DNA of 63,648 nucleotides, counting the filler, from Choristocarpus tenellus KU-1152 (lineage: Eukaryota > Protista > Phaeophyceae): assembly GCA_964200185.2 (NCBI GenBank). It is 12 parts of 12 records of this genome, joined end to end, with 100 filler letters (N's around TTAATTAATTAA, not from the genome) between each part and the next. Parts side by side here need not be neighbours in the genome. Positions count along the whole stretch, not along the records: positions 25,177 to 33,551 come from CAXNAD020004793.1; 11 more parts are not named here. One strand, written 5' to 3'. This document shows positions 25,177 through 33,551 of this stretch, in pieces. The notes below the pieces were generated by a model. That model was not told the origin of the DNA and made no database searches. It worked only from the letters and a program-made list of their open reading frames with translations. The translations under genes were made by a program, and so were the position numbers. The first letter of the stretch is position 1. Each line of letters begins with the position of its first letter.

Positions 25177-25242
25177 CCCCCCCAGATACTTTGACCCAAC
25201 TCAATATTATTTTTTTGTCGTTTCTTTTTTTGACCTTGGCAG

Positions 25243-28200
25243 GTGTTCGTGCGTGCTATGATGAGGGAAAGCGTGTGGCAGAGACTCTGTTCTTTGACTT
25301 CAACAGGCAGCACCACTTAGCCATTAGGGTGGCAAGGATCTTCAATACGTATGGCCCTTTCATGCACCCCTATGGTGGGTTTAAAAAACAAACAGAATTG
25401 TCTAACAGCTACGCCCTATGGTTTGGAAAATAAAATACTTTTTTTCCTGTGGCAACGCCGCCTTTTTTTAAAATTTATTTTAGTGTCCCTTTAGTGTCCC
25501 TTCACATGTGGGGGGGTCTTACCGTGTATGAGACAGCAACCTATCAAAGTTTTTTTTTTGGTACTACAGTTCATTATTCTTACTATAATTTGTTATTATT
25601 TGTAAATACAGTTCATTATTCTTACTATAATTTGTTATTATTTGTAAATACAGTTCATCATTCTTACTATAATTTGTTATTATTTGTAAATACAGTTCAT
25701 CATTCTTACTATAATTTGTTATTATTTGTAAATACAGTTCATCATTCTTACCATAATTTGTTATTATTTGTAAATACAGTGCGTTGTTATTATGGTATGT
25801 TATTTTAGGAGTAATAAAGGACCAGACGCTGTGTTTGATTTGATTACTGCGTGTTCAATAATAATAATAATAGTAATAGTAATAATAATAGTAATAATAA
25901 TAGTAATAAATGACCTGCGCTGTTTATCTGCGTGTTAAATAGTATTTACACCTTGTATTTGGGAATAGAGGTAGCTGGTACTTTCCTGTATTGTATTGTG
26001 TTGTGTTGTGTTGTGGTCCTGTACCACTTGTGGACAGAGGCAGGTGCAGTGGACAGAAAAAATCATGTTGGTTGAATGGTAAGGCATGTAGGGCGTGGAA
26101 ATGTTGAATGAGTGTACCACAGCAGAGCTTTATGAATTAGCTCTTGAGTTTATGAATGTTATACCATAGTATTTCAGGGTTATGCTGCTAAGACTTGACA
26201 TCTATGCTCTTGAGAATATTTTTGGCATTGGAAATGCCCTGTCTTTAAGTGCAATGTGGAGGTGCTCTCTTTTTATTTTTTTCAAGATTATTCTCTTCAC
26301 ACTGTTTTCAAGATTGTATGAAATTGGTTATTCCCAGGACTACTAAGCTGTTCATTTTTGTTAAAATCATATTTAGCTAGGGTGGTGATGTTAATGCATC
26401 CTCTGCACACATTGTCAACCTTGTTCATTTTTGGAATTTCAATCTTTACATATTTTTTTCACACCTGACACATGTTTTTAGCGTGAAATTTGTTTATTTC
26501 AAACTTTACATACATAAAACTTATTTTTATTTTTATTGTTGTTGATAAATTTGGACATTTGGATAGAGGATGAATAGTTGTGTCCTGGTCAAGACTTGGA
26601 AAACTTTAGGAATTGATAATTTTTTTGTCAAAGTGTCCCCTGTGAGTGTTGCCAGATGTAGGCAATCAAAGGTACTCTGTGACCAAGGAAGGTGCTGTAT
26701 TCTTTGTACCGTGACTTGCTCAGAAGAAAAAAATCGCGTGTTAGAAGTTATGGGGACAAATCACTTTCACTTCAGTGGATCCATTGTCTTTTTGGTTGTG
26801 AATTCGATTGAGTCGATTTGTTTAATGAAAGGAGAATCGAGATAGTGAAAGTGTTAATCAATCCTCTTGATCACTCTACATTGTTTTTTTACTTGAATGT
26901 GTGTGCTGTGTGATTTCATTCCTCTGAAAGACCCCTCTTGGGACCTCTCACTTGGATTGAACGACTCGGATGGATTTTTTTTTAGTTTATTCTGTTCTGT
27001 TTATAATATTAATAATAAATAATGAATAATGAATCCATTTTGAATCACGACAACACTTGGGCTCTGTCCTCGAAAACCAATCTTAGATGGAAGGGTTGTG
27101 AGCAACTTTGTTGTTCAGGCTCTCAATGGGGATGATATCACCATATATGGTGATGGCAGCCAGACGCGATCTTTCTGTTTTGTGGATGACCTGGTGGAGG
27201 GTCTGATACGCCTCATGAACAACGAGACAGAGGTGAGTTGGATACAGATTGATTCTATTGGCCCATAGTGACTCTGAGGCATTTTTTGTTGGTGGAAATG
27301 TTGATTAGTGTCCTCTACTCTTCCGTCTTGTTCAAGACTCCAATGTATTTTAGTGTGAACAAGCGCTAGCTATAGCATGAGTTGAATCACTGAAACTTAG
27401 GGTGTGGGCTTAGGGTGTGGGCTTAGGGTGTAATATTGTGCCCAGGCACTGTCCAACCCTCATGTTGAGAGGGGTGCCATCAGCGAGATGTAAGTATGTG
27501 CGTGAGAGCTAACTTGCACCTGTGCCTTCTCTTTTTTGGAATGGGTTGGAATGGGTTGGGATGGGTTGGAATAGGTTGGAATGTGTTGGTGCTGGAGAGG
27601 AAAATGTCCGTTGCAGAATGGGTCACGTGTGAAGTATGCTTACCTCAAGTTCTTTTTACAAGGTCTGTGTGGTCGGTCACACACAGGTTTAAATTGTTTG
27701 CGATAGTATTGAACTGATACCAATAGTACTTACCAATAGTACTTACCAATAGTACTTACCAATAGTACTTACCAATAGTACTTACCAATAGTACTTACCG
27801 ATAGTACTTACCAATAGTACTTACCCACATATTGATCCTTGGGCATGGGGTCAATTAATTGTCTAGCAGTGGTACAACACTTTTTTTCTTTTTTGTATAC
27901 ATGTAGCTATATTGCTGCGCACTGATTGGTTGGTCCCTCTATGTACCAATTACTATTTTTTGCCTGATTTATGTGTGATCTTTCCATTGTGTGCTGCCCA
28001 ATGAAATGCCCAGATCGGACCCATGAACATCGGCAACCCAACAGAATTCACTATCAGAGAGCTGGCGGAGCTCACTGTGCGTCTGAGTGGATCGAGCAGT
28101 AAGATCATCTACATGCCCTTGCCCCAGGTTAGTGATGGCCTTTTGAGAGTGTATGTACTATTTTTTTCACGCATGCATGACTTCACTTGGAGTGACCAAC

Positions 28201-29467
28201 GCTAGCATGGGTAGGGTGCAAGGCATTGATGGTTGAATCATCCATTCTTGGCAATGTTTTGTATTGGTGATATTGATTAATTTTTTTTTATTTTTGTACC
28301 GTGTCTGATGCCCTCTTTAATGCCCTCCATACAACTACAAGACCCTCTATGCCATCGTGGAGTTGTTTGAGACATAAAGGCGGTTCACATGTCTACCTGT
28401 GAATGTGCTTGATGGTTGATGGCACTTGCCATATGAATCTGCATGTTGACTGTTGTGTTAATCTTCTGACCACACGCTTGCTAATGATGTGAAGATAGGG
28501 GTTAGGGTTAGGGTTAGGGTTAGGGTTAGGGTTAGGGTTGAATACTGATGGGATACTCATACCAAATAGGGTTGTTTCTTGGAGTGTTTTCAGGGAGGAT
28601 GTGTCTTTATTGCTATTGTGTAAAAATTCATGTCAGCATTTTTTACTCTACCCTTCAGATTGCACTAGCAACCTCACGGAATCTGTCAGACAACAATGTG
28701 TACTCAGTTGCCACAAAGCATTCACTATGGGGAGCCTCGTAGTGAATGCTTCCTCACTCATGGCATTGTAGAAGGTTTGGGAGACATAGAGCTTTGCTTG
28801 GTGGAGAGTGTGCTGGGATACCCGATGCTGTGTACATGATGATGTTAAGAGAATTCAAATTGGGTGCTTTGTGTGTATTCTAGGGTCAGATCATGTGTTT
28901 GCACCAGTGCCTCAGGTATTTTTGACGTAAAGGTTGCTTGGATTTGATGGTTGTGTTCATTACTGTATACTATATTCTCTGGAGTTACTGATAGTGTGCC
29001 ATACCTAATAATTTGCAGTCTTTAGAGATGAATAGAGCTCCTCTGAATGATAAATATAAACAATTTAATGCAAGGCCTAGTTACAAAGTTTAAAGGTGAG
29101 AAAGGATGACTTAGAGATATTCCAGGATATCCTTGTCAAGGACGAACAATTAGGTTATGGTAGTGACAGTTGTGGAATTGATACTGAAAAATGGTCTTAT
29201 GTGAGTATAGGCATAGCAGAAACTGAGCATGTGCCGTAAATGCTTGAGTCTTGTCCACATCGCCATTTGCTTGTCCTATGAAACAAACACGGGGGGTGGG
29301 GGGATCCAACGTGCTTTTAACATTAGAATATCTCCTCTATGAATACCCCCAATCCAGGATGACCCTAAGCAACGTTTGCCAGACATCAGCTTGGCGAAAC
29401 AGGCCTTGGACTGGGAACCCAAAGTGAACCTAGAGGAGGGTCTCAAAAAGACAATTGAGTACTTTAG
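25243..29467 (+). CDS. UXS1: UDP-glucuronate decarboxylase (UDP-xylose synthase), C-terminal half, 4 exons; last exon not located
   Basis: Exons 25243-25374 ([38 protein letters not shown]), 27087-27232 ([44 protein letters not shown]), 28014-28127 ([19 protein letters not shown]), 29358-29467 ([36 protein letters not shown]). All GT-AG and phase-consistent. Confidence 0.96.
25565..25780. repeat. 42-bp minisatellite x~5 in a UXS intron
   Basis: TACAGTTCATYATTCTTACTATAATTTGTTATTATTTGTAAA in tandem. Confidence 0.95.
27718..27826. repeat. 13-bp minisatellite (CAATAGTACTTAC) x~8
   Basis: Tandem array seen directly. Confidence 0.95.
28497..28538 (+). repeat. Intronic interstitial telomeric tract (TTAGGG)6
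   Basis: Perfect hexamers. Confidence 0.95.
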
Positions 29468-29696
29468 GTGGGTATAACAACGGGCAACAATCATGTTCTT
29501 GGGTTTTGAGGTAGTCTTTTTTATTTGTCCACTCTCACCTGGGGACTATCCCGGCCTGTGGTCAGAGGCACTTGATATTGCACTAGTTGTGGTATTGTAG
29601 CTGATGGAAGCAACTGTTGCATCGCGGCCAATTGTACTGGGCTTGATTGTGCCTTGATTCTTTGTTTCTCGTGGGGGTTCAGACATCCCTCGACTC

Positions 29697-30000
29697 ATAG
29701 TAATTTCTTTTATTTGCTTTAGGGCTTGAATTATCTATTGAAATGTTAAAAGCAATTTTAACCAAAATACATGTTTGGTCTCGGTTCATTGTAAGTTTTA
29801 GTAACTTCATTTTAAGTTTTAGTAACTTCATTGTGAGTTTTAGTAACTTCATTGTAAGTTTTAGTAACTTCATTGTAAGGTTTAGTAACTTCATTGTGAG
29901 TTTTAGTAACTTCATTGTAAGTTTTAGTAACTTCATTGTAAGTTTTAGTAACCGGATTAATATTAGCTGTATTTATAATGTTGATTGCTGAGGATAATAT
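29697..30000 (+). pseudogene. kefB: Fragment of a bacterial (Rickettsiaceae-like) KefB/KefC CPA2 potassium/proton antiporter
   Basis: With two small indels it reads IV/FLLFALGLELSIEMLKA/KYMFGLGSL*VLVT..GLILAVFIMLIAEDN, matching the CPA2 motif G(I/V)VFLLFxIGLELSxxRLxxMxxYVFGLGSLQV. Very AT-rich and intronless. Confidence 0.75.
29786..29953 (+). repeat. 21-bp minisatellite x8 derived from kefB codons S-L-(Q>stop)-V-L-V-T
   Basis: TCATTGTAAGTTTTAGTAACT from 29786, 29807 through 29933, in register with the kefB frame on both sides. Confidence 0.9.
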
Positions 30001-30269
30001 TTTATGTGCTTTTTCTAATTTAAATTCAATATTTAATTGTGCAATATAATAGTAGAACGTATTTATTACGTAAGGGCGAGTTGTATAAACAAGAAATACA
30101 AGACACTAAAAATCACTGGTTGTTTAAAATAAATGTTCATGATAGACTGCAATTTTATCACGCAGAATTTTTTTCAATTTTTTTAATACCTTCTTAAAGG
30201 AAGCAGAACAATGTAGTTTTTATAATATTTGTCTAGGAAATAATTTAGAATGACTTCTAATTGACGCAT

Positions 30270-30486
30270 TGTCCAATTTTTATAGTATCTCCAACGTGGT
30301 ATATAGATGTTGGTTACCCAAGATACAGAAATCAATATTTGAGCATTTGTTTTTGATATACTCAAGCATTGCTTTTGTTCCATATTTTGCTTCGCCTTCT
30401 TCATCAGTGGTAATGAGGAAACTAATTGATCCATTGGGATTTTTGTTACGGATTAAGAATTCTTGTACTGCTGCTAAAGAACAAGG
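30270..30486 (-). pseudogene. dapE: Fragment of bacterial (Rickettsiaceae-like) succinyl-diaminopimelate desuccinylase
   Basis: CSLAAVQEFLIRNKNPNGSISFLITTDEEGEAKYGTKAMLEYIKNKCSNIDFCILG(-1)EPTSIYHVGDTIKIG. Contains the DapE motifs GSISFLITxDEEG, GEPT and GDTIKIG, with one frameshift. Confidence 0.88.
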
Positions 30487-30617
30487 ATGAAAATGTAAAG
30501 ATTATGGAACTGAAAGCCAGTAGTAATATGACAAAAGATTGGATTAACAATAAGTATGGAGATGTTATATCTCAAATAGCTATCAACATGGGATTAGAAT
30601 TAAGAGCGATAAAATAA
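30486..30617 (+). pseudogene. 3' end of a DnaA_N-domain protein resembling rickettsial plasmid DnaA-like replication proteins
   Basis: DENVKIMELKASSNMTKDWINNKYGDVISQIAINMGLELRAIK* fits the DnaA domain I pattern (xLxAPxxFxxDWIxxxY), here located at a protein C-terminus. Confidence 0.6.
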
Positions 30618-30663
30618 CACGCAAAATACATTTTTTATAATGCTGCAGTTTCAAAAAACTTCT

Positions 30664-30817
30664 TAAATGTGGGATTGTGAAAAATACAAAAACAGATATT
30701 GCAGTTATTTTGATTTAAACTACTATATTATTGAATTTTTTGCTCTCTTTTGTTCCACTGTGTAACATAAAACCAGCGAGTAGTACAATAAAAAAGGAAG
30801 GGAGATTAATACAACCT
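30664..30817 (-). pseudogene. Fragment of a bacterial APC-family cationic amino-acid permease (Rickettsiaceae-like)
   Basis: GCINLPSFFIVLLAGFMLHSGTKESKKFNNIVV*IKITAISVFVFFTIPH matches the GxINLPAxxI...GTKESxxxNxIxVxIK motif, with one stop. Confidence 0.8.
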
Positions 30818-33551
30818 TAAAAGGTTTTATATTGATGAAACAGCATTTCTACTAAATAATGTTAAACTTGAAGTTATCAAAATACGGCAGAAATCAAGTT
30901 TACTATGTTATCCCTACGTTCAGCAATATGACTAATAGATATGCTAATTACTAACACAATTAGGACCTAATCCATAAATTTTTGATACACCATTTCTTTC
31001 AATGGTATATCTTTGAAACATATTACTTTTTTCCAAATCAGATTTTCAGTAAAACCTGGAGCGGCTGAGTGGTGTTGAGCAAATGGAGGAGATACCAACC
31101 TGAACAGTGATGATTGCCTGATGTTAGGAGTGCATTTCCCATTAGTTTTCTTCTAAACTGTTTTGCATTGCATCCTTTCCTCCACTCTTGTACTCAGGAC
31201 ACTTGACATGCGCAAGTTCAAAAAGCCCACGAACCACAGTGCCCATAAGAGCTCCAACAATGAGAGAGCACGAGAAAGGACAATGTCGCCGATACCTACG
31301 ACTAAGATTGACCATGATGGCAGTAACTGAGGCCATGTTTTGTTCAATATCTAATTATGGTTCCTGTCTCAGGCTACTGTATCAGTTATCATTGATGAAG
31401 TTGATAACTTCATGACGTGCATGGCAGTTTTCTATCTTGCCCAGGCAACCAACTATAGTATCTGTTTTTCAAACTGTAGAGAAATACAGACGATCTTGGT
31501 GGTGGTGTATCAATCCTTGTTTTGCTTGGCAGGTCTGTCTGGCGATTGAGTATGTTGTGGTGAAGCATTCTGGATTTACATATGTGGTGTGTTAATGTTT
31601 TTCTTCAGGTGTACGAGGTGATTGAGCTGAGCTGACTAACTAACCAACGTTTGTAAGCCGTAGAGATAGCTTTGGGGTGATGAGTTTGAACTGTTTCTGG
31701 TTATAGTTCTACTACTAAATGCCTATTTCCTGTTTGTGTGTGTGGCAAACCAACCTGATCGCAGAACAAAATCACTTTCTACTGAAGGTGGTAGGTGATC
31801 GGATGGGTTCATTGGGAAAAAGCACACACACAGGTAAAGAGTAATGGGTTAGATTTTGTGTATATCCTGAGAGGCTAAGTTGTTTGAATCTCTGTGTTTT
31901 TATCGATATTTGGAACCCTGCATTCCCTCATCACTGGACAATCCGCCTAACAATTGCAGTGCAATTATTTTAGCTAACATTGATCTCTGGTGGGTCAAAA
32001 GGGTGTTTTGTTTCTTCAGTGATGATGTAATGCTACACTGACACTCATAGCGAGAATTCCACAGTCTTTCCATTGGCAGTCATGGCCTGATTGATCTGAT
32101 CACTCTTGGCATTGTTCCCTCATACCTTGACCCCCTTCATAGGGTTTGCCTATCATTTCGATTCATATTGGCGGTATATTTTTCATATGCATGGATACAT
32201 TGCGGAAAATTGCTACTTATGTAAGAGAACTTCCAATATCCAAGATACGTGTATTGCGTAGTAAAAACCCCCTTTCCTATCTATACAATTGAAACAGAGG
32301 CGGTTGTGTTACAGTTAAAAACGACGACTGACTCCTTTCTGTACAAAATACTGTGTATTTTTTGTGAGAACATGAAGCATGTACGAGGTAGTATATGATG
32401 ACAGAACTGTTAGAGAATGTTCTTGAATGGACTGGCACTGTATATTGATCTTCACTTATTTACATGATATGTAGTACTGTACGTATTTGATTGAGATGTT
32501 TGGATATTACAAAGACCCAACTATATCATCAGTACTTCCTAAGTACTGATTGTAGTATGAAATGACGCAAACTATGCCTCTGAAAGTAATGATGTTACGC
32601 TCAAACGTTCATCCATAATCGGTGGGTATTGTCCGTTTTTTTCTACACCAAACAAAAGAACTCAGTTTGTTCTTCCATACTTGAGGTTTGTCATTGCCAG
32701 CAGGAGGATTACATTCAGGAGTCACCTGCTCTTGAGCTGTATGTCCGCTTTTTATATATCATTCAGAGCCCATTTGCTCTACAATGTCCATTTTGCACCA
32801 CTACCATATTTTTTGTGCTAAACACCTAATGAAATGTTACTCATATCTCACTTTACTCTGTAATGTTAGTTGTCCATAACAAACGAAGCAGGTTTTATCT
32901 TGGTTGGTTGTTTTCATTATTTCACACCATCTTAATCTCAAACCCATGGTCAGATGGTGATCGCTGTAAATTAGAGAGGAAGCCATACCATTATATGTAG
33001 GTATGGCGCAAATATGGCAATGTACACATTATTATGTAATGCTTCTTCCATTCGAAATATAGCCACCAGTCCTGGTGGTAAGACTTGATTTTCTGCCCTG
33101 GGCTCAATGATGCTGTTGTCCTCCACCATCCTAGGATGTCAGTGTTGACTTACTCGATCTTCTCTACACAATTCTATATACTCCAAGTAAATCTGTACGA
33201 CTACTAGAATGCTATGCCAATGCTGGTGTGTCACCCACAGTCCTTGACATCTTCTGCCTACTCATAGATGGGAACGTTCTCCTGTTATGTGCTGCCCCCA
33301 GTGTCACACCCCTGTCCCAATACCAGTGCTTTCTCTTCCTGAGACACCTTGCAAGTATTGTGGAAGGAAGGGTAGCTTCTCTCCTCAGCACTAGTGGACC
33401 CAATGTGATCCATCCACACATAGCTATGCATGAGGTACTTCCATATATGAGCACTGGCCCACGAGTGAGGCAGATAGCATACTGCAAGGAACAGCCTCTC
33501 AGCAAAATTGAGGATGGAGCATACTATGGAGGATGGTTTTGACCCCAAACT

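What the first reader, a model, noticed from the sequence alone, without database searches (positions are those of the whole stretch)
29697..31053. Patchwork of Rickettsiales-like endosymbiont gene fragments integrated behind a UXS splice donor in an algal nuclear genome
Seen: a sharply bounded, very AT-rich ~1.35-kb block about 230 bp after the phase-2 donor of the last visible UXS exon, so probably intronic. It is on the same contig as spliced eukaryotic exons. It holds 130-300-bp pieces of at least four unrelated bacterial genes in alternating orientation: kefB (+), dapE (-), a DnaA_N-type protein end (+) and an APC amino-acid permease (-). Unidentified pieces lie at ~30000-30270 and ~30820-31053. 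Three of the four pieces carry stops or frameshifts, and none is a whole gene. Knowledge: the motifs and low GC recall Rickettsiaceae orthologues; Rickettsiaceae such as Ca. Megaira infect algae; NUMT/NUPT insertions are often such mosaics. Inference: fragmented DNA from an intracellular bacterium was end-joined and captured at a chromosome break. That would make it a molecular fossil of a past infection. A contaminant contig would instead be collinear and intact.
Basis: partly seen in the sequence, partly recalled or inferred. Interest (0 to 1): 0.92.

Follow-up and report, generated by a model that had tools for sequence, protein, structure and literature searches.

The report
Shattered symbiont DNA inside an intron
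A eukaryote carries, inside an intron of a working sugar-metabolism gene, a 1.35-kb jumble of broken gene scraps from a Rickettsia-family intracellular bacterium; it is a real genetic fossil of infection, of a kind already known from Volvox and from Wolbachia in animals.

Summary
Real and nuclear. Block 29697-31053 is 27.9% GC with sharp edges (flanks 41-43%). It lies in the last intron (29468-31197) of a UXS gene; one run holds a spliced contig at depth about 900 that removes it. Contigs from independent samples bridge both edges and the internal junctions, and the block is about as polymorphic as its flanks, so it is not a chimera. It is a patchwork of short gene pieces: kefB (+), dapE (-), the C-terminus of a plasmid-type DnaA-like protein (+), an APC permease (-) and, newly, probably yciB (-); two pieces stay unidentified. 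dapE places in an unnamed Rickettsiaceae lineage on the Ca. Megaera side (82% nucleotide identity); genus Rickettsia is rejected. kefB carries a stop that a host-style 21-nt minisatellite later copied eight times, so the insert has aged in place. Best reading: fragmented symbiont DNA end-joined into a break, like a complex NUMT, now neutral. The joining mechanism is inferred, and the host being an alga was not shown. Precedent exists (Volvox carteri, Wolbachia inserts), so this is a new member of a known kind.

The parts
25244..25374 (+). UXS (UDP-glucuronate decarboxylase) exon; upstream exons lie outside the piece
   Evidence: tblastn 76-81% to UXS-type proteins; joined to the next exon in the spliced contig, loose end at 27086
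27088..27232 (+). UXS exon
   Evidence: best PDB hit human UXS1, E 1e-14; spliced contig
28014..28127 (+). UXS exon
   Evidence: spliced contig, GT..AG joints
29358..29467 (+). UXS penultimate exon, phase-2 donor
   Evidence: spliced contig; translation
29468..31197 (+). last UXS intron, 1730 bp, GT..AG, holds the whole insertion
   Evidence: joint 29465 to 31196 (cut +2), depth 912 in run X2; boundaries
29697..31053 (.). AT-rich bacterial mosaic insertion, 27.9% GC, no target-site duplication found
   Evidence: edges bridged by contigs in X1, X2 (both) and X3 (right edge)
29697..29998 (+). kefB (CPA2 potassium antiporter) internal fragment, about 155 bp once the array is collapsed; 1-nt and 4-nt insertions and one premature stop
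   Evidence: 65% aa to Rickettsiaceae KefB 64-111; 73% nt to L163
29785..29952 (+). 8 x 21-nt tandem amplification of seven kefB codons; every unit carries the premature stop
29999..30270 (.). unidentified AT-rich piece or pieces (25% GC)
   Evidence: no credible hit in Pfam, NCBIfam, PHROGs, PDB, plasmids or 1.8 billion protein representatives
30271..30484 (-). dapE internal fragment (residues 111-181 of 378), one 1-nt deletion near 30315
   Evidence: 82% nt to L068 and L069; trees
30485..30617 (+). 3' end, with stop codon, of a rickettsial plasmid-type DnaA-like gene (C-terminal DnaA_N domain)
30618..30667 (.). 50-bp spacer, probably the 3' flank of the DnaA-like gene
   Evidence: no match; assignment is inference from position
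30668..30818 (-). APC-family amino-acid permease internal fragment with a premature stop at about 30715-30717
30822..30966 (-). probable yciB/ispZ (septation protein A) internal fragment with two 1-nt frameshifts
   Evidence: 7-sequence YciB HMM, rank 3 of 20,001 shuffles; a second copy in the runs reads in frame through the family's KxKPT-like motif
30967..31053 (.). unidentified terminal piece (24% GC)
   Evidence: no hit
31198..31330 (+). UXS terminal coding exon with stop; 3' UTR appears to run to about 32128
   Evidence: X2 contigs 31196-31934 at depth 1142 and 31936-32128 at depth 134; translation

Best explanation
A dead nuclear insertion of endosymbiont DNA, the bacterial counterpart of a complex NUMT. 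An intracellular Rickettsiaceae bacterium (unnamed lineage on the Ca. Megaera side) released DNA in an ancestral host cell. Five to seven short pieces (about 90-270 bp) from unlinked chromosomal genes and from a plasmid-type replication gene were ligated in mixed orientation and into a break in the last UXS intron. The spliceosome removes the block, so it was tolerated and drifted: small indels, stops, and then a host-style minisatellite expansion of an already broken kefB stretch. It encodes nothing. SHOWN: intronic position, host linkage in independent samples, gene identities, donor family for dapE, mid-gene truncation, decay. INFERRED: the order stop-then-array, one donor for all pieces, end-joining at a double-strand break, one capture event, neutrality.
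For: Spliced contig skips the block at depth 912 while block contigs are at 11. Edges and inner junctions are bridged in X1 and X2, the right edge also in X3, at flank-like depth. 4 variable sites in 1357 bp against 11 in about 4540 bp of flank. dapE places with P0033/P0242; genus Rickettsia and non-Rickettsiaceae branches are rejected on a fixed backbone, AU p<0.01; it sits in a 100/98 clade with Ca. Megaera venefica. In relatives dapE lies between dapF and tig, and kefB between rsfS and an SH3 gene; none of the window's neighbours is adjacent there, and kefB, dapE, APC and yciB are cut mid-gene. All 8 array units carry the stop. Amino-acid changes are in excess: 10-11 non-synonymous against 14-16 synonymous codons to the nearest relatives, versus 1 and 7 between those relatives. 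Complex organelle insertions show end-joining signatures (PMC6215612).
Against: No empty site and no exact donor sequence, so junction microhomology could not be scored. Only dapE was placed on a tree; no Rickettsiaceae orthologue was in hand for APC or yciB, and the DnaA_N piece is only 41-52% identical to known ones. About 360 bp is unidentified. The tandem array is not spanned by one listed contig. An unconstrained one-clade AU test was uninformative (p 0.30).
Confidence: 0.72

Rival explanations
1. Same donor and nuclear location, but the patchwork arose later: a much larger insert was whittled down by deletions and inversions, or pieces were added one after another at a break-prone spot, or were copied in by template switching during repair.
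For: The insert is old enough for many lesions. An interspersed host repeat lies 125 bp to the left and the host introns are full of unstable arrays.
Against: The pieces come from unlinked loci and from a plasmid-type gene, so a collinear precursor would have been enormous for an intron of an expressed gene. No host DNA is seen between pieces (all 24-34% GC).
Confidence: 0.13
2. Two-step route: the scraps were first joined in an organelle genome or in a degenerate symbiont replicon and then moved to the nucleus in one piece.
For: Degenerate rickettsial inserts occur in a fern mitochondrial genome (PMC10027690). Unidentified AT-rich pieces could be organelle spacers.
Against: No mitochondrial or plastid piece was recognised; no Rfam hit; no high-depth contig carries the mosaic in the four runs.
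Confidence: 0.07
3. Mixed donors: a phagotrophic or multiply infected host captured scraps from several low-GC bacteria, only some of them Rickettsiaceae.
For: APC best hits in the only collection searched were Bacillus plasmids (that collection holds no Rickettsiaceae chromosomes). Two pieces are unidentified and the host is unknown.
Against: Three pieces independently point to Rickettsiaceae, and GC is uniform and matches the relatives' 31-39% after drift.
Confidence: 0.06
4. Assembly or library chimera joining contaminant bacterial reads to a host contig.
For: The pieces are about read-length, and no single listed contig spans the whole block.
Against: The same junctions occur in separate samples with their own SNPs, a spliced contig joins the two flanks, and the pieces carry stops, frameshifts and an amplified array that a living bacterium would not.
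Confidence: 0.02

Closest known systems
[quoted passage not shown]
   Same: Rickettsiaceae DNA in a eukaryotic nuclear genome, truncated, joined from at least two donor loci (16S rRNA next to murB-ddlB-ftsQ), and distinct from the symbiont found in a related strain.
   Different: There: larger, mostly collinear, in-frame pieces in about 9 kb with host repeats between them. Here: five to seven pieces of about 90-270 bp packed without host spacer, mixed orientation, a plasmid-type piece, heavier decay, inside the intron of an expressed gene.
Complex and mosaic NUMTs/NUPTs (PMC6215612)
   Same: Several non-adjacent fragments joined in one nuclear insertion, no target-site duplication, decaying.
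   Different: The donor is an intracellular bacterium, not an organelle; junction signatures could not be scored here.
Nuclear Wolbachia transfers in nematodes (PMC4046930, PMC2882956, bioRxiv 10.1101/2025.03.17.643741; abstracts only)
   Same: Rickettsiales DNA fragments in a host genome used as fossils of past symbiosis.
   Different: Animal hosts and an Anaplasmataceae donor; here a Megaera-side Rickettsiaceae donor in an unidentified eukaryote.
[quoted passage not shown]
   Same: Many degenerate Rickettsiales-type coding fragments in a eukaryote.
   Different: Mitochondrial location and mostly Caedimonas/Caedibacter-like donors; here nuclear and intronic.

Membership tests
Nuclear insertion of endosymbiont DNA (NUMT/nuwt-like) | physically joined to host nuclear sequence | tested here: met
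   contigs bridge both edges in X1 and X2 and the right edge in X3; flanking exons are spliced together
Nuclear insertion of endosymbiont DNA (NUMT/nuwt-like) | depth and polymorphism like the host locus | tested here: met
   X1 flanks 12.8-21, block 17.5-21; 4 variable sites in 1357 bp against 11 in about 4540 bp. Contig depth is a coarse measure.
Nuclear insertion of endosymbiont DNA (NUMT/nuwt-like) | sequence nests within an endosymbiont lineage | tested here: met
   dapE tree and placement test; kefB and DnaA_N best matches; APC and yciB donors not tested
Nuclear insertion of endosymbiont DNA (NUMT/nuwt-like) | decay of coding sequence | tested here: met
   stops in kefB and APC, frameshifts in kefB, dapE and yciB, excess amino-acid change
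Nuclear insertion of endosymbiont DNA (NUMT/nuwt-like) | empty site in a relative | tested here: inconclusive
   run X4 (another organism) covers only one exon edge plus two low-depth 151-nt records
Complex (mosaic) insertion formed by end-joining | fragments from non-adjacent donor loci | tested here: met
   gene neighbourhoods of relatives; mid-gene cuts
Complex (mosaic) insertion formed by end-joining | blunt or microhomology junctions | not testable with these tools
   needs the donor sequence; nearest relatives are only 73-82% identical
Ca. Megaera (Megaira) as donor | groups with named Megaera in gene trees | tested here: inconclusive
   same 100/98 clade as Ca. M. venefica but not its sister; 66% against 80% to unnamed relatives; the M. 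venefica subgroup branch was rejected in the placement test; no 16S available
genus Rickettsia as donor | DapE nests within Rickettsia | tested here: not met
   placement on or inside the Rickettsia branch rejected, AU p<0.01; 58% to R. bellii
Transposable element | terminal repeats, target-site duplication, transposase | tested here: not met
   none found
Functional horizontal gene transfer | intact, expressed gene | tested here: not met
   all pieces partial; block depth 11 against 912-1142 for exons in X2

The most novel reading that the evidence does not exclude
This host routinely patches chromosome breaks with shredded DNA of a resident Rickettsiaceae symbiont, chromosome and plasmid alike, so its genome holds many such micro-mosaics. 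The second dapE and yciB copies at host-like depth would be further inserts, and the symbiont would be acting as a DNA donor in the way mitochondria and plastids do.
Probability: 0.3. Interest if true: 0.72.

Novelty: new member of a known kind. Interest (0 to 1): 0.52.

Why it matters
Of the literature searched, Volvox carteri was the only algal nuclear precedent for Rickettsiaceae DNA. This is a well-supported further case with an unusually fine-grained patchwork that includes a plasmid-type gene. It ties an unnamed Rickettsiaceae lineage known only from metagenomes and assemblies to a eukaryotic host lineage. It gives a dated sequence of events (capture, stop, minisatellite growth) and a marker that can be scored across relatives. 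It also warns that rickettsial hits in such assemblies need not mean a living symbiont. It adds no function to the host.

Tried and rejected
Earlier findings could not be consulted. Nucleotide search of the block against plasmids gave only a low-complexity hit from the tandem array. The 29999-30270 and 30967-31053 pieces found nothing credible in Pfam, NCBIfam, PHROGs, PDB, the protein atlas, plasmids, local Rickettsiaceae loci or 1.8 billion representatives; the single hit there was a repetitive sequence at 29%. A weak nucleotide match of 30839-30889 to an M23 peptidase was out of frame and rejected. Chromosomal dnaA as source of the DnaA_N piece was rejected: lower score, and the domain here ends at a stop. 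No Rfam or special fold. Accession searches for the nearest relatives found no paper. Unconstrained one-clade AU tests were uninformative, so a fixed-backbone placement test was run. A first yciB test used a wrong third frame and was weak (rank 7 of 5,001); the corrected frame came from the second copy seen.

Full report
Observation. The piece 25177-33551 is eukaryotic nuclear DNA with long, repeat-rich introns. The block 29697-31053 has 27.9% GC against 43.4% and 41.5% on either side, with both edges sharp at 50-bp resolution. No other 1357-bp window in the piece falls below 32.4%. No terminal repeats or target-site duplication were found.

Host gene and position. The flanking exons encode a UDP-glucuronate decarboxylase (UXS; best PDB match human UXS1, E 1e-14). 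Four public runs of one study hold the stretch. Run X2 contains a contig at depth 912 that joins the exons across GT..AG introns, including a skip of 1730 bases from 29467 to 31198; the next exon and its downstream region stand at depth 1142. X2's type is not on record; I infer it holds RNA from this spliced contig. The gene is expressed and the insert is spliced out. TTAGGG repeats occur in many eukaryotic groups (PMC3622300), so 'alga' is neither shown nor excluded.

Not a chimera. X1 contig 28546-29847 and X2 contig 29470-29784 cross the left edge. X1 contig 29923-32900, X2 contig 29926-31225 and X3 contig 30991-31617 cross the right edge, the first two also all junctions right of the tandem array. 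Depth in X1 is 17.5-21 on the block and 12.8-21 on the flanks. The samples differ from the window at four sites inside the block and eleven in about 4540 bp of flank, a similar rate. Only the 21-nt array is not spanned by one listed contig, but kefB codons continue in register on both sides of it. All four runs come from one study, so this is three samples, not three studies.

Anatomy. (1) kefB, + strand, 29697-29998, matches KefB residues 64-111 of Rickettsiaceae (65% aa, 73% nt) once the array is collapsed; it has a 1-nt and a 4-nt insertion and a stop where relatives have Gln. All eight 21-nt units carry that stop, so the stop most likely came first and the array grew afterwards, as with the other intronic minisatellites of this host. 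(2) 29999-30270, unidentified. (3) dapE, - strand, 30271-30484, residues 111-181 of 378, one 1-nt deletion. (4) 30485-30617, + strand, the last 43 codons and stop of a DnaA_N-type protein. Best matches are on Ca. Megaera and Rickettsia plasmids, where this domain lies at or near the C-terminus of DnaA-like proteins; it scores lower against chromosomal DnaA. (5) APC permease, - strand, 30668-30818, with a stop. (6) Probable yciB, - strand, 30822-30966, with two frameshifts. A small HMM of seven YciB proteins ranks the read-through third among 20,001 shuffles; this call is moderate, since the frames were chosen after seeing the sequence. (7) 30967-31053, unidentified.

Donor. A scan of 185,579 prokaryotic genomes with the dapE piece ranked seven Rickettsiaceae first, 77% at best. 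A wider search found closer unnamed relatives, P0033 and P0242, at 80% aa and 82% nt. In trees the piece sits in the strongly supported clade (100/98) that is sister to genus Rickettsia and holds Ca. Megaera venefica. On a fixed backbone its best place is beside P0033/P0242; Rickettsia and all outgroup branches are rejected at AU p<0.01 or close to it, while several neighbouring branches are not. Identity to Ca. M. venefica is 66%, so the donor is an unnamed Megaera-side lineage. No Rickettsiaceae orthologue was in hand for APC or yciB, so a single donor is inferred from three pieces and uniform base composition.

Mosaic. In relatives dapE lies between dapF and tig, and kefB between rsfS and an SH3-domain gene. 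None of the window's neighbours is adjacent there, and kefB, dapE, APC and yciB are cut inside the gene. The joins are therefore not inherited gene order. Against its nearest relatives the dapE piece has 10-11 non-synonymous and 14-16 synonymous codon differences, whereas those relatives differ by 1 and 7, as expected after release from selection.

Mechanism. Most likely (0.72), fragmented symbiont DNA was ligated together and into a break in this intron, as described for complex organelle insertions (PMC6215612), then tolerated because splicing removes it. Shown: location, linkage, identities, donor family for dapE, decay. Inferred: end-joining, one event, neutrality. Rivals are later erosion or serial capture (0.13), passage through an organelle or symbiont replicon (0.07; compare PMC10027690), mixed donors (0.06) and chimera (0.02).

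Open point. The runs hold a second, diverged copy of dapE (X1, X3) and of the yciB-like piece (X1, X2, X3). In X1 these lie on contigs of 514 and 4432 nt at depth about 19, close to host depth; the yciB copy appears to read in frame where the window's copy is broken. They may be a living related symbiont or further nuclear inserts.

Comparison and verdict. Rickettsial gene fragments from two donor loci are known in the Volvox carteri nucleus (PMC4324946), and Wolbachia inserts serve as fossils of symbiosis in nematodes (abstracts only). This case differs in degree: smaller and more numerous pieces, mixed orientation, a plasmid-type component, an intronic site in an expressed gene. It is a real, well-supported new member of a known kind with no function for the host. 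Interest 0.52. No step had to be referred.

Noticed in passing
runs X1-X3, matching window 30316-30336, 30439-30475 and 30839-30879: Second, diverged copies of dapE and of the yciB-like piece on other contigs (514 and 4432 nt in X1, depth about 19): a living related symbiont or more inserts.
   Followed up: partly
window 29538-29572: A 34-nt host motif shared with about ten other contigs in each of three runs, with unrelated flanks: a short interspersed repeat 125 bp left of the insertion. No Rfam hit, no unusual fold.
   Followed up: partly
window 25565-25780, 25857-25909, 27396-27431, 27536-27589, 27718-27825, 28499-28539: Host introns carry many minisatellites (42, 3/12, 13, 10, 13 nt units) and an internal TTAGGG-type tract of about seven copies.
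   Followed up: no
window 30384: Sample X2's allele gives His, as in the nearest bacterial relatives, where the window has Tyr; it may be the ancestral state still segregating.
   Followed up: no
window 31331-32128: Apparent 3' UTR of UXS; contig depth drops from 1142 to 134 at about 31935, perhaps two polyadenylation sites.
   Followed up: no
run X4 at window 28011-28051, 29725-29875 and 29924-30074: The second organism of the study appears to share the UXS intron position at 28013; its two 151-nt low-depth records over the block look like cross-contamination, not a second host.
   Followed up: no
L069 (GCA_024449895.1) and L068 (ERZ3929068): Nearest relatives of the donor are intact, collinear dapF-dapE-tig contigs in unnamed assemblies; their source could point to the donor's host range.
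   Followed up: partly
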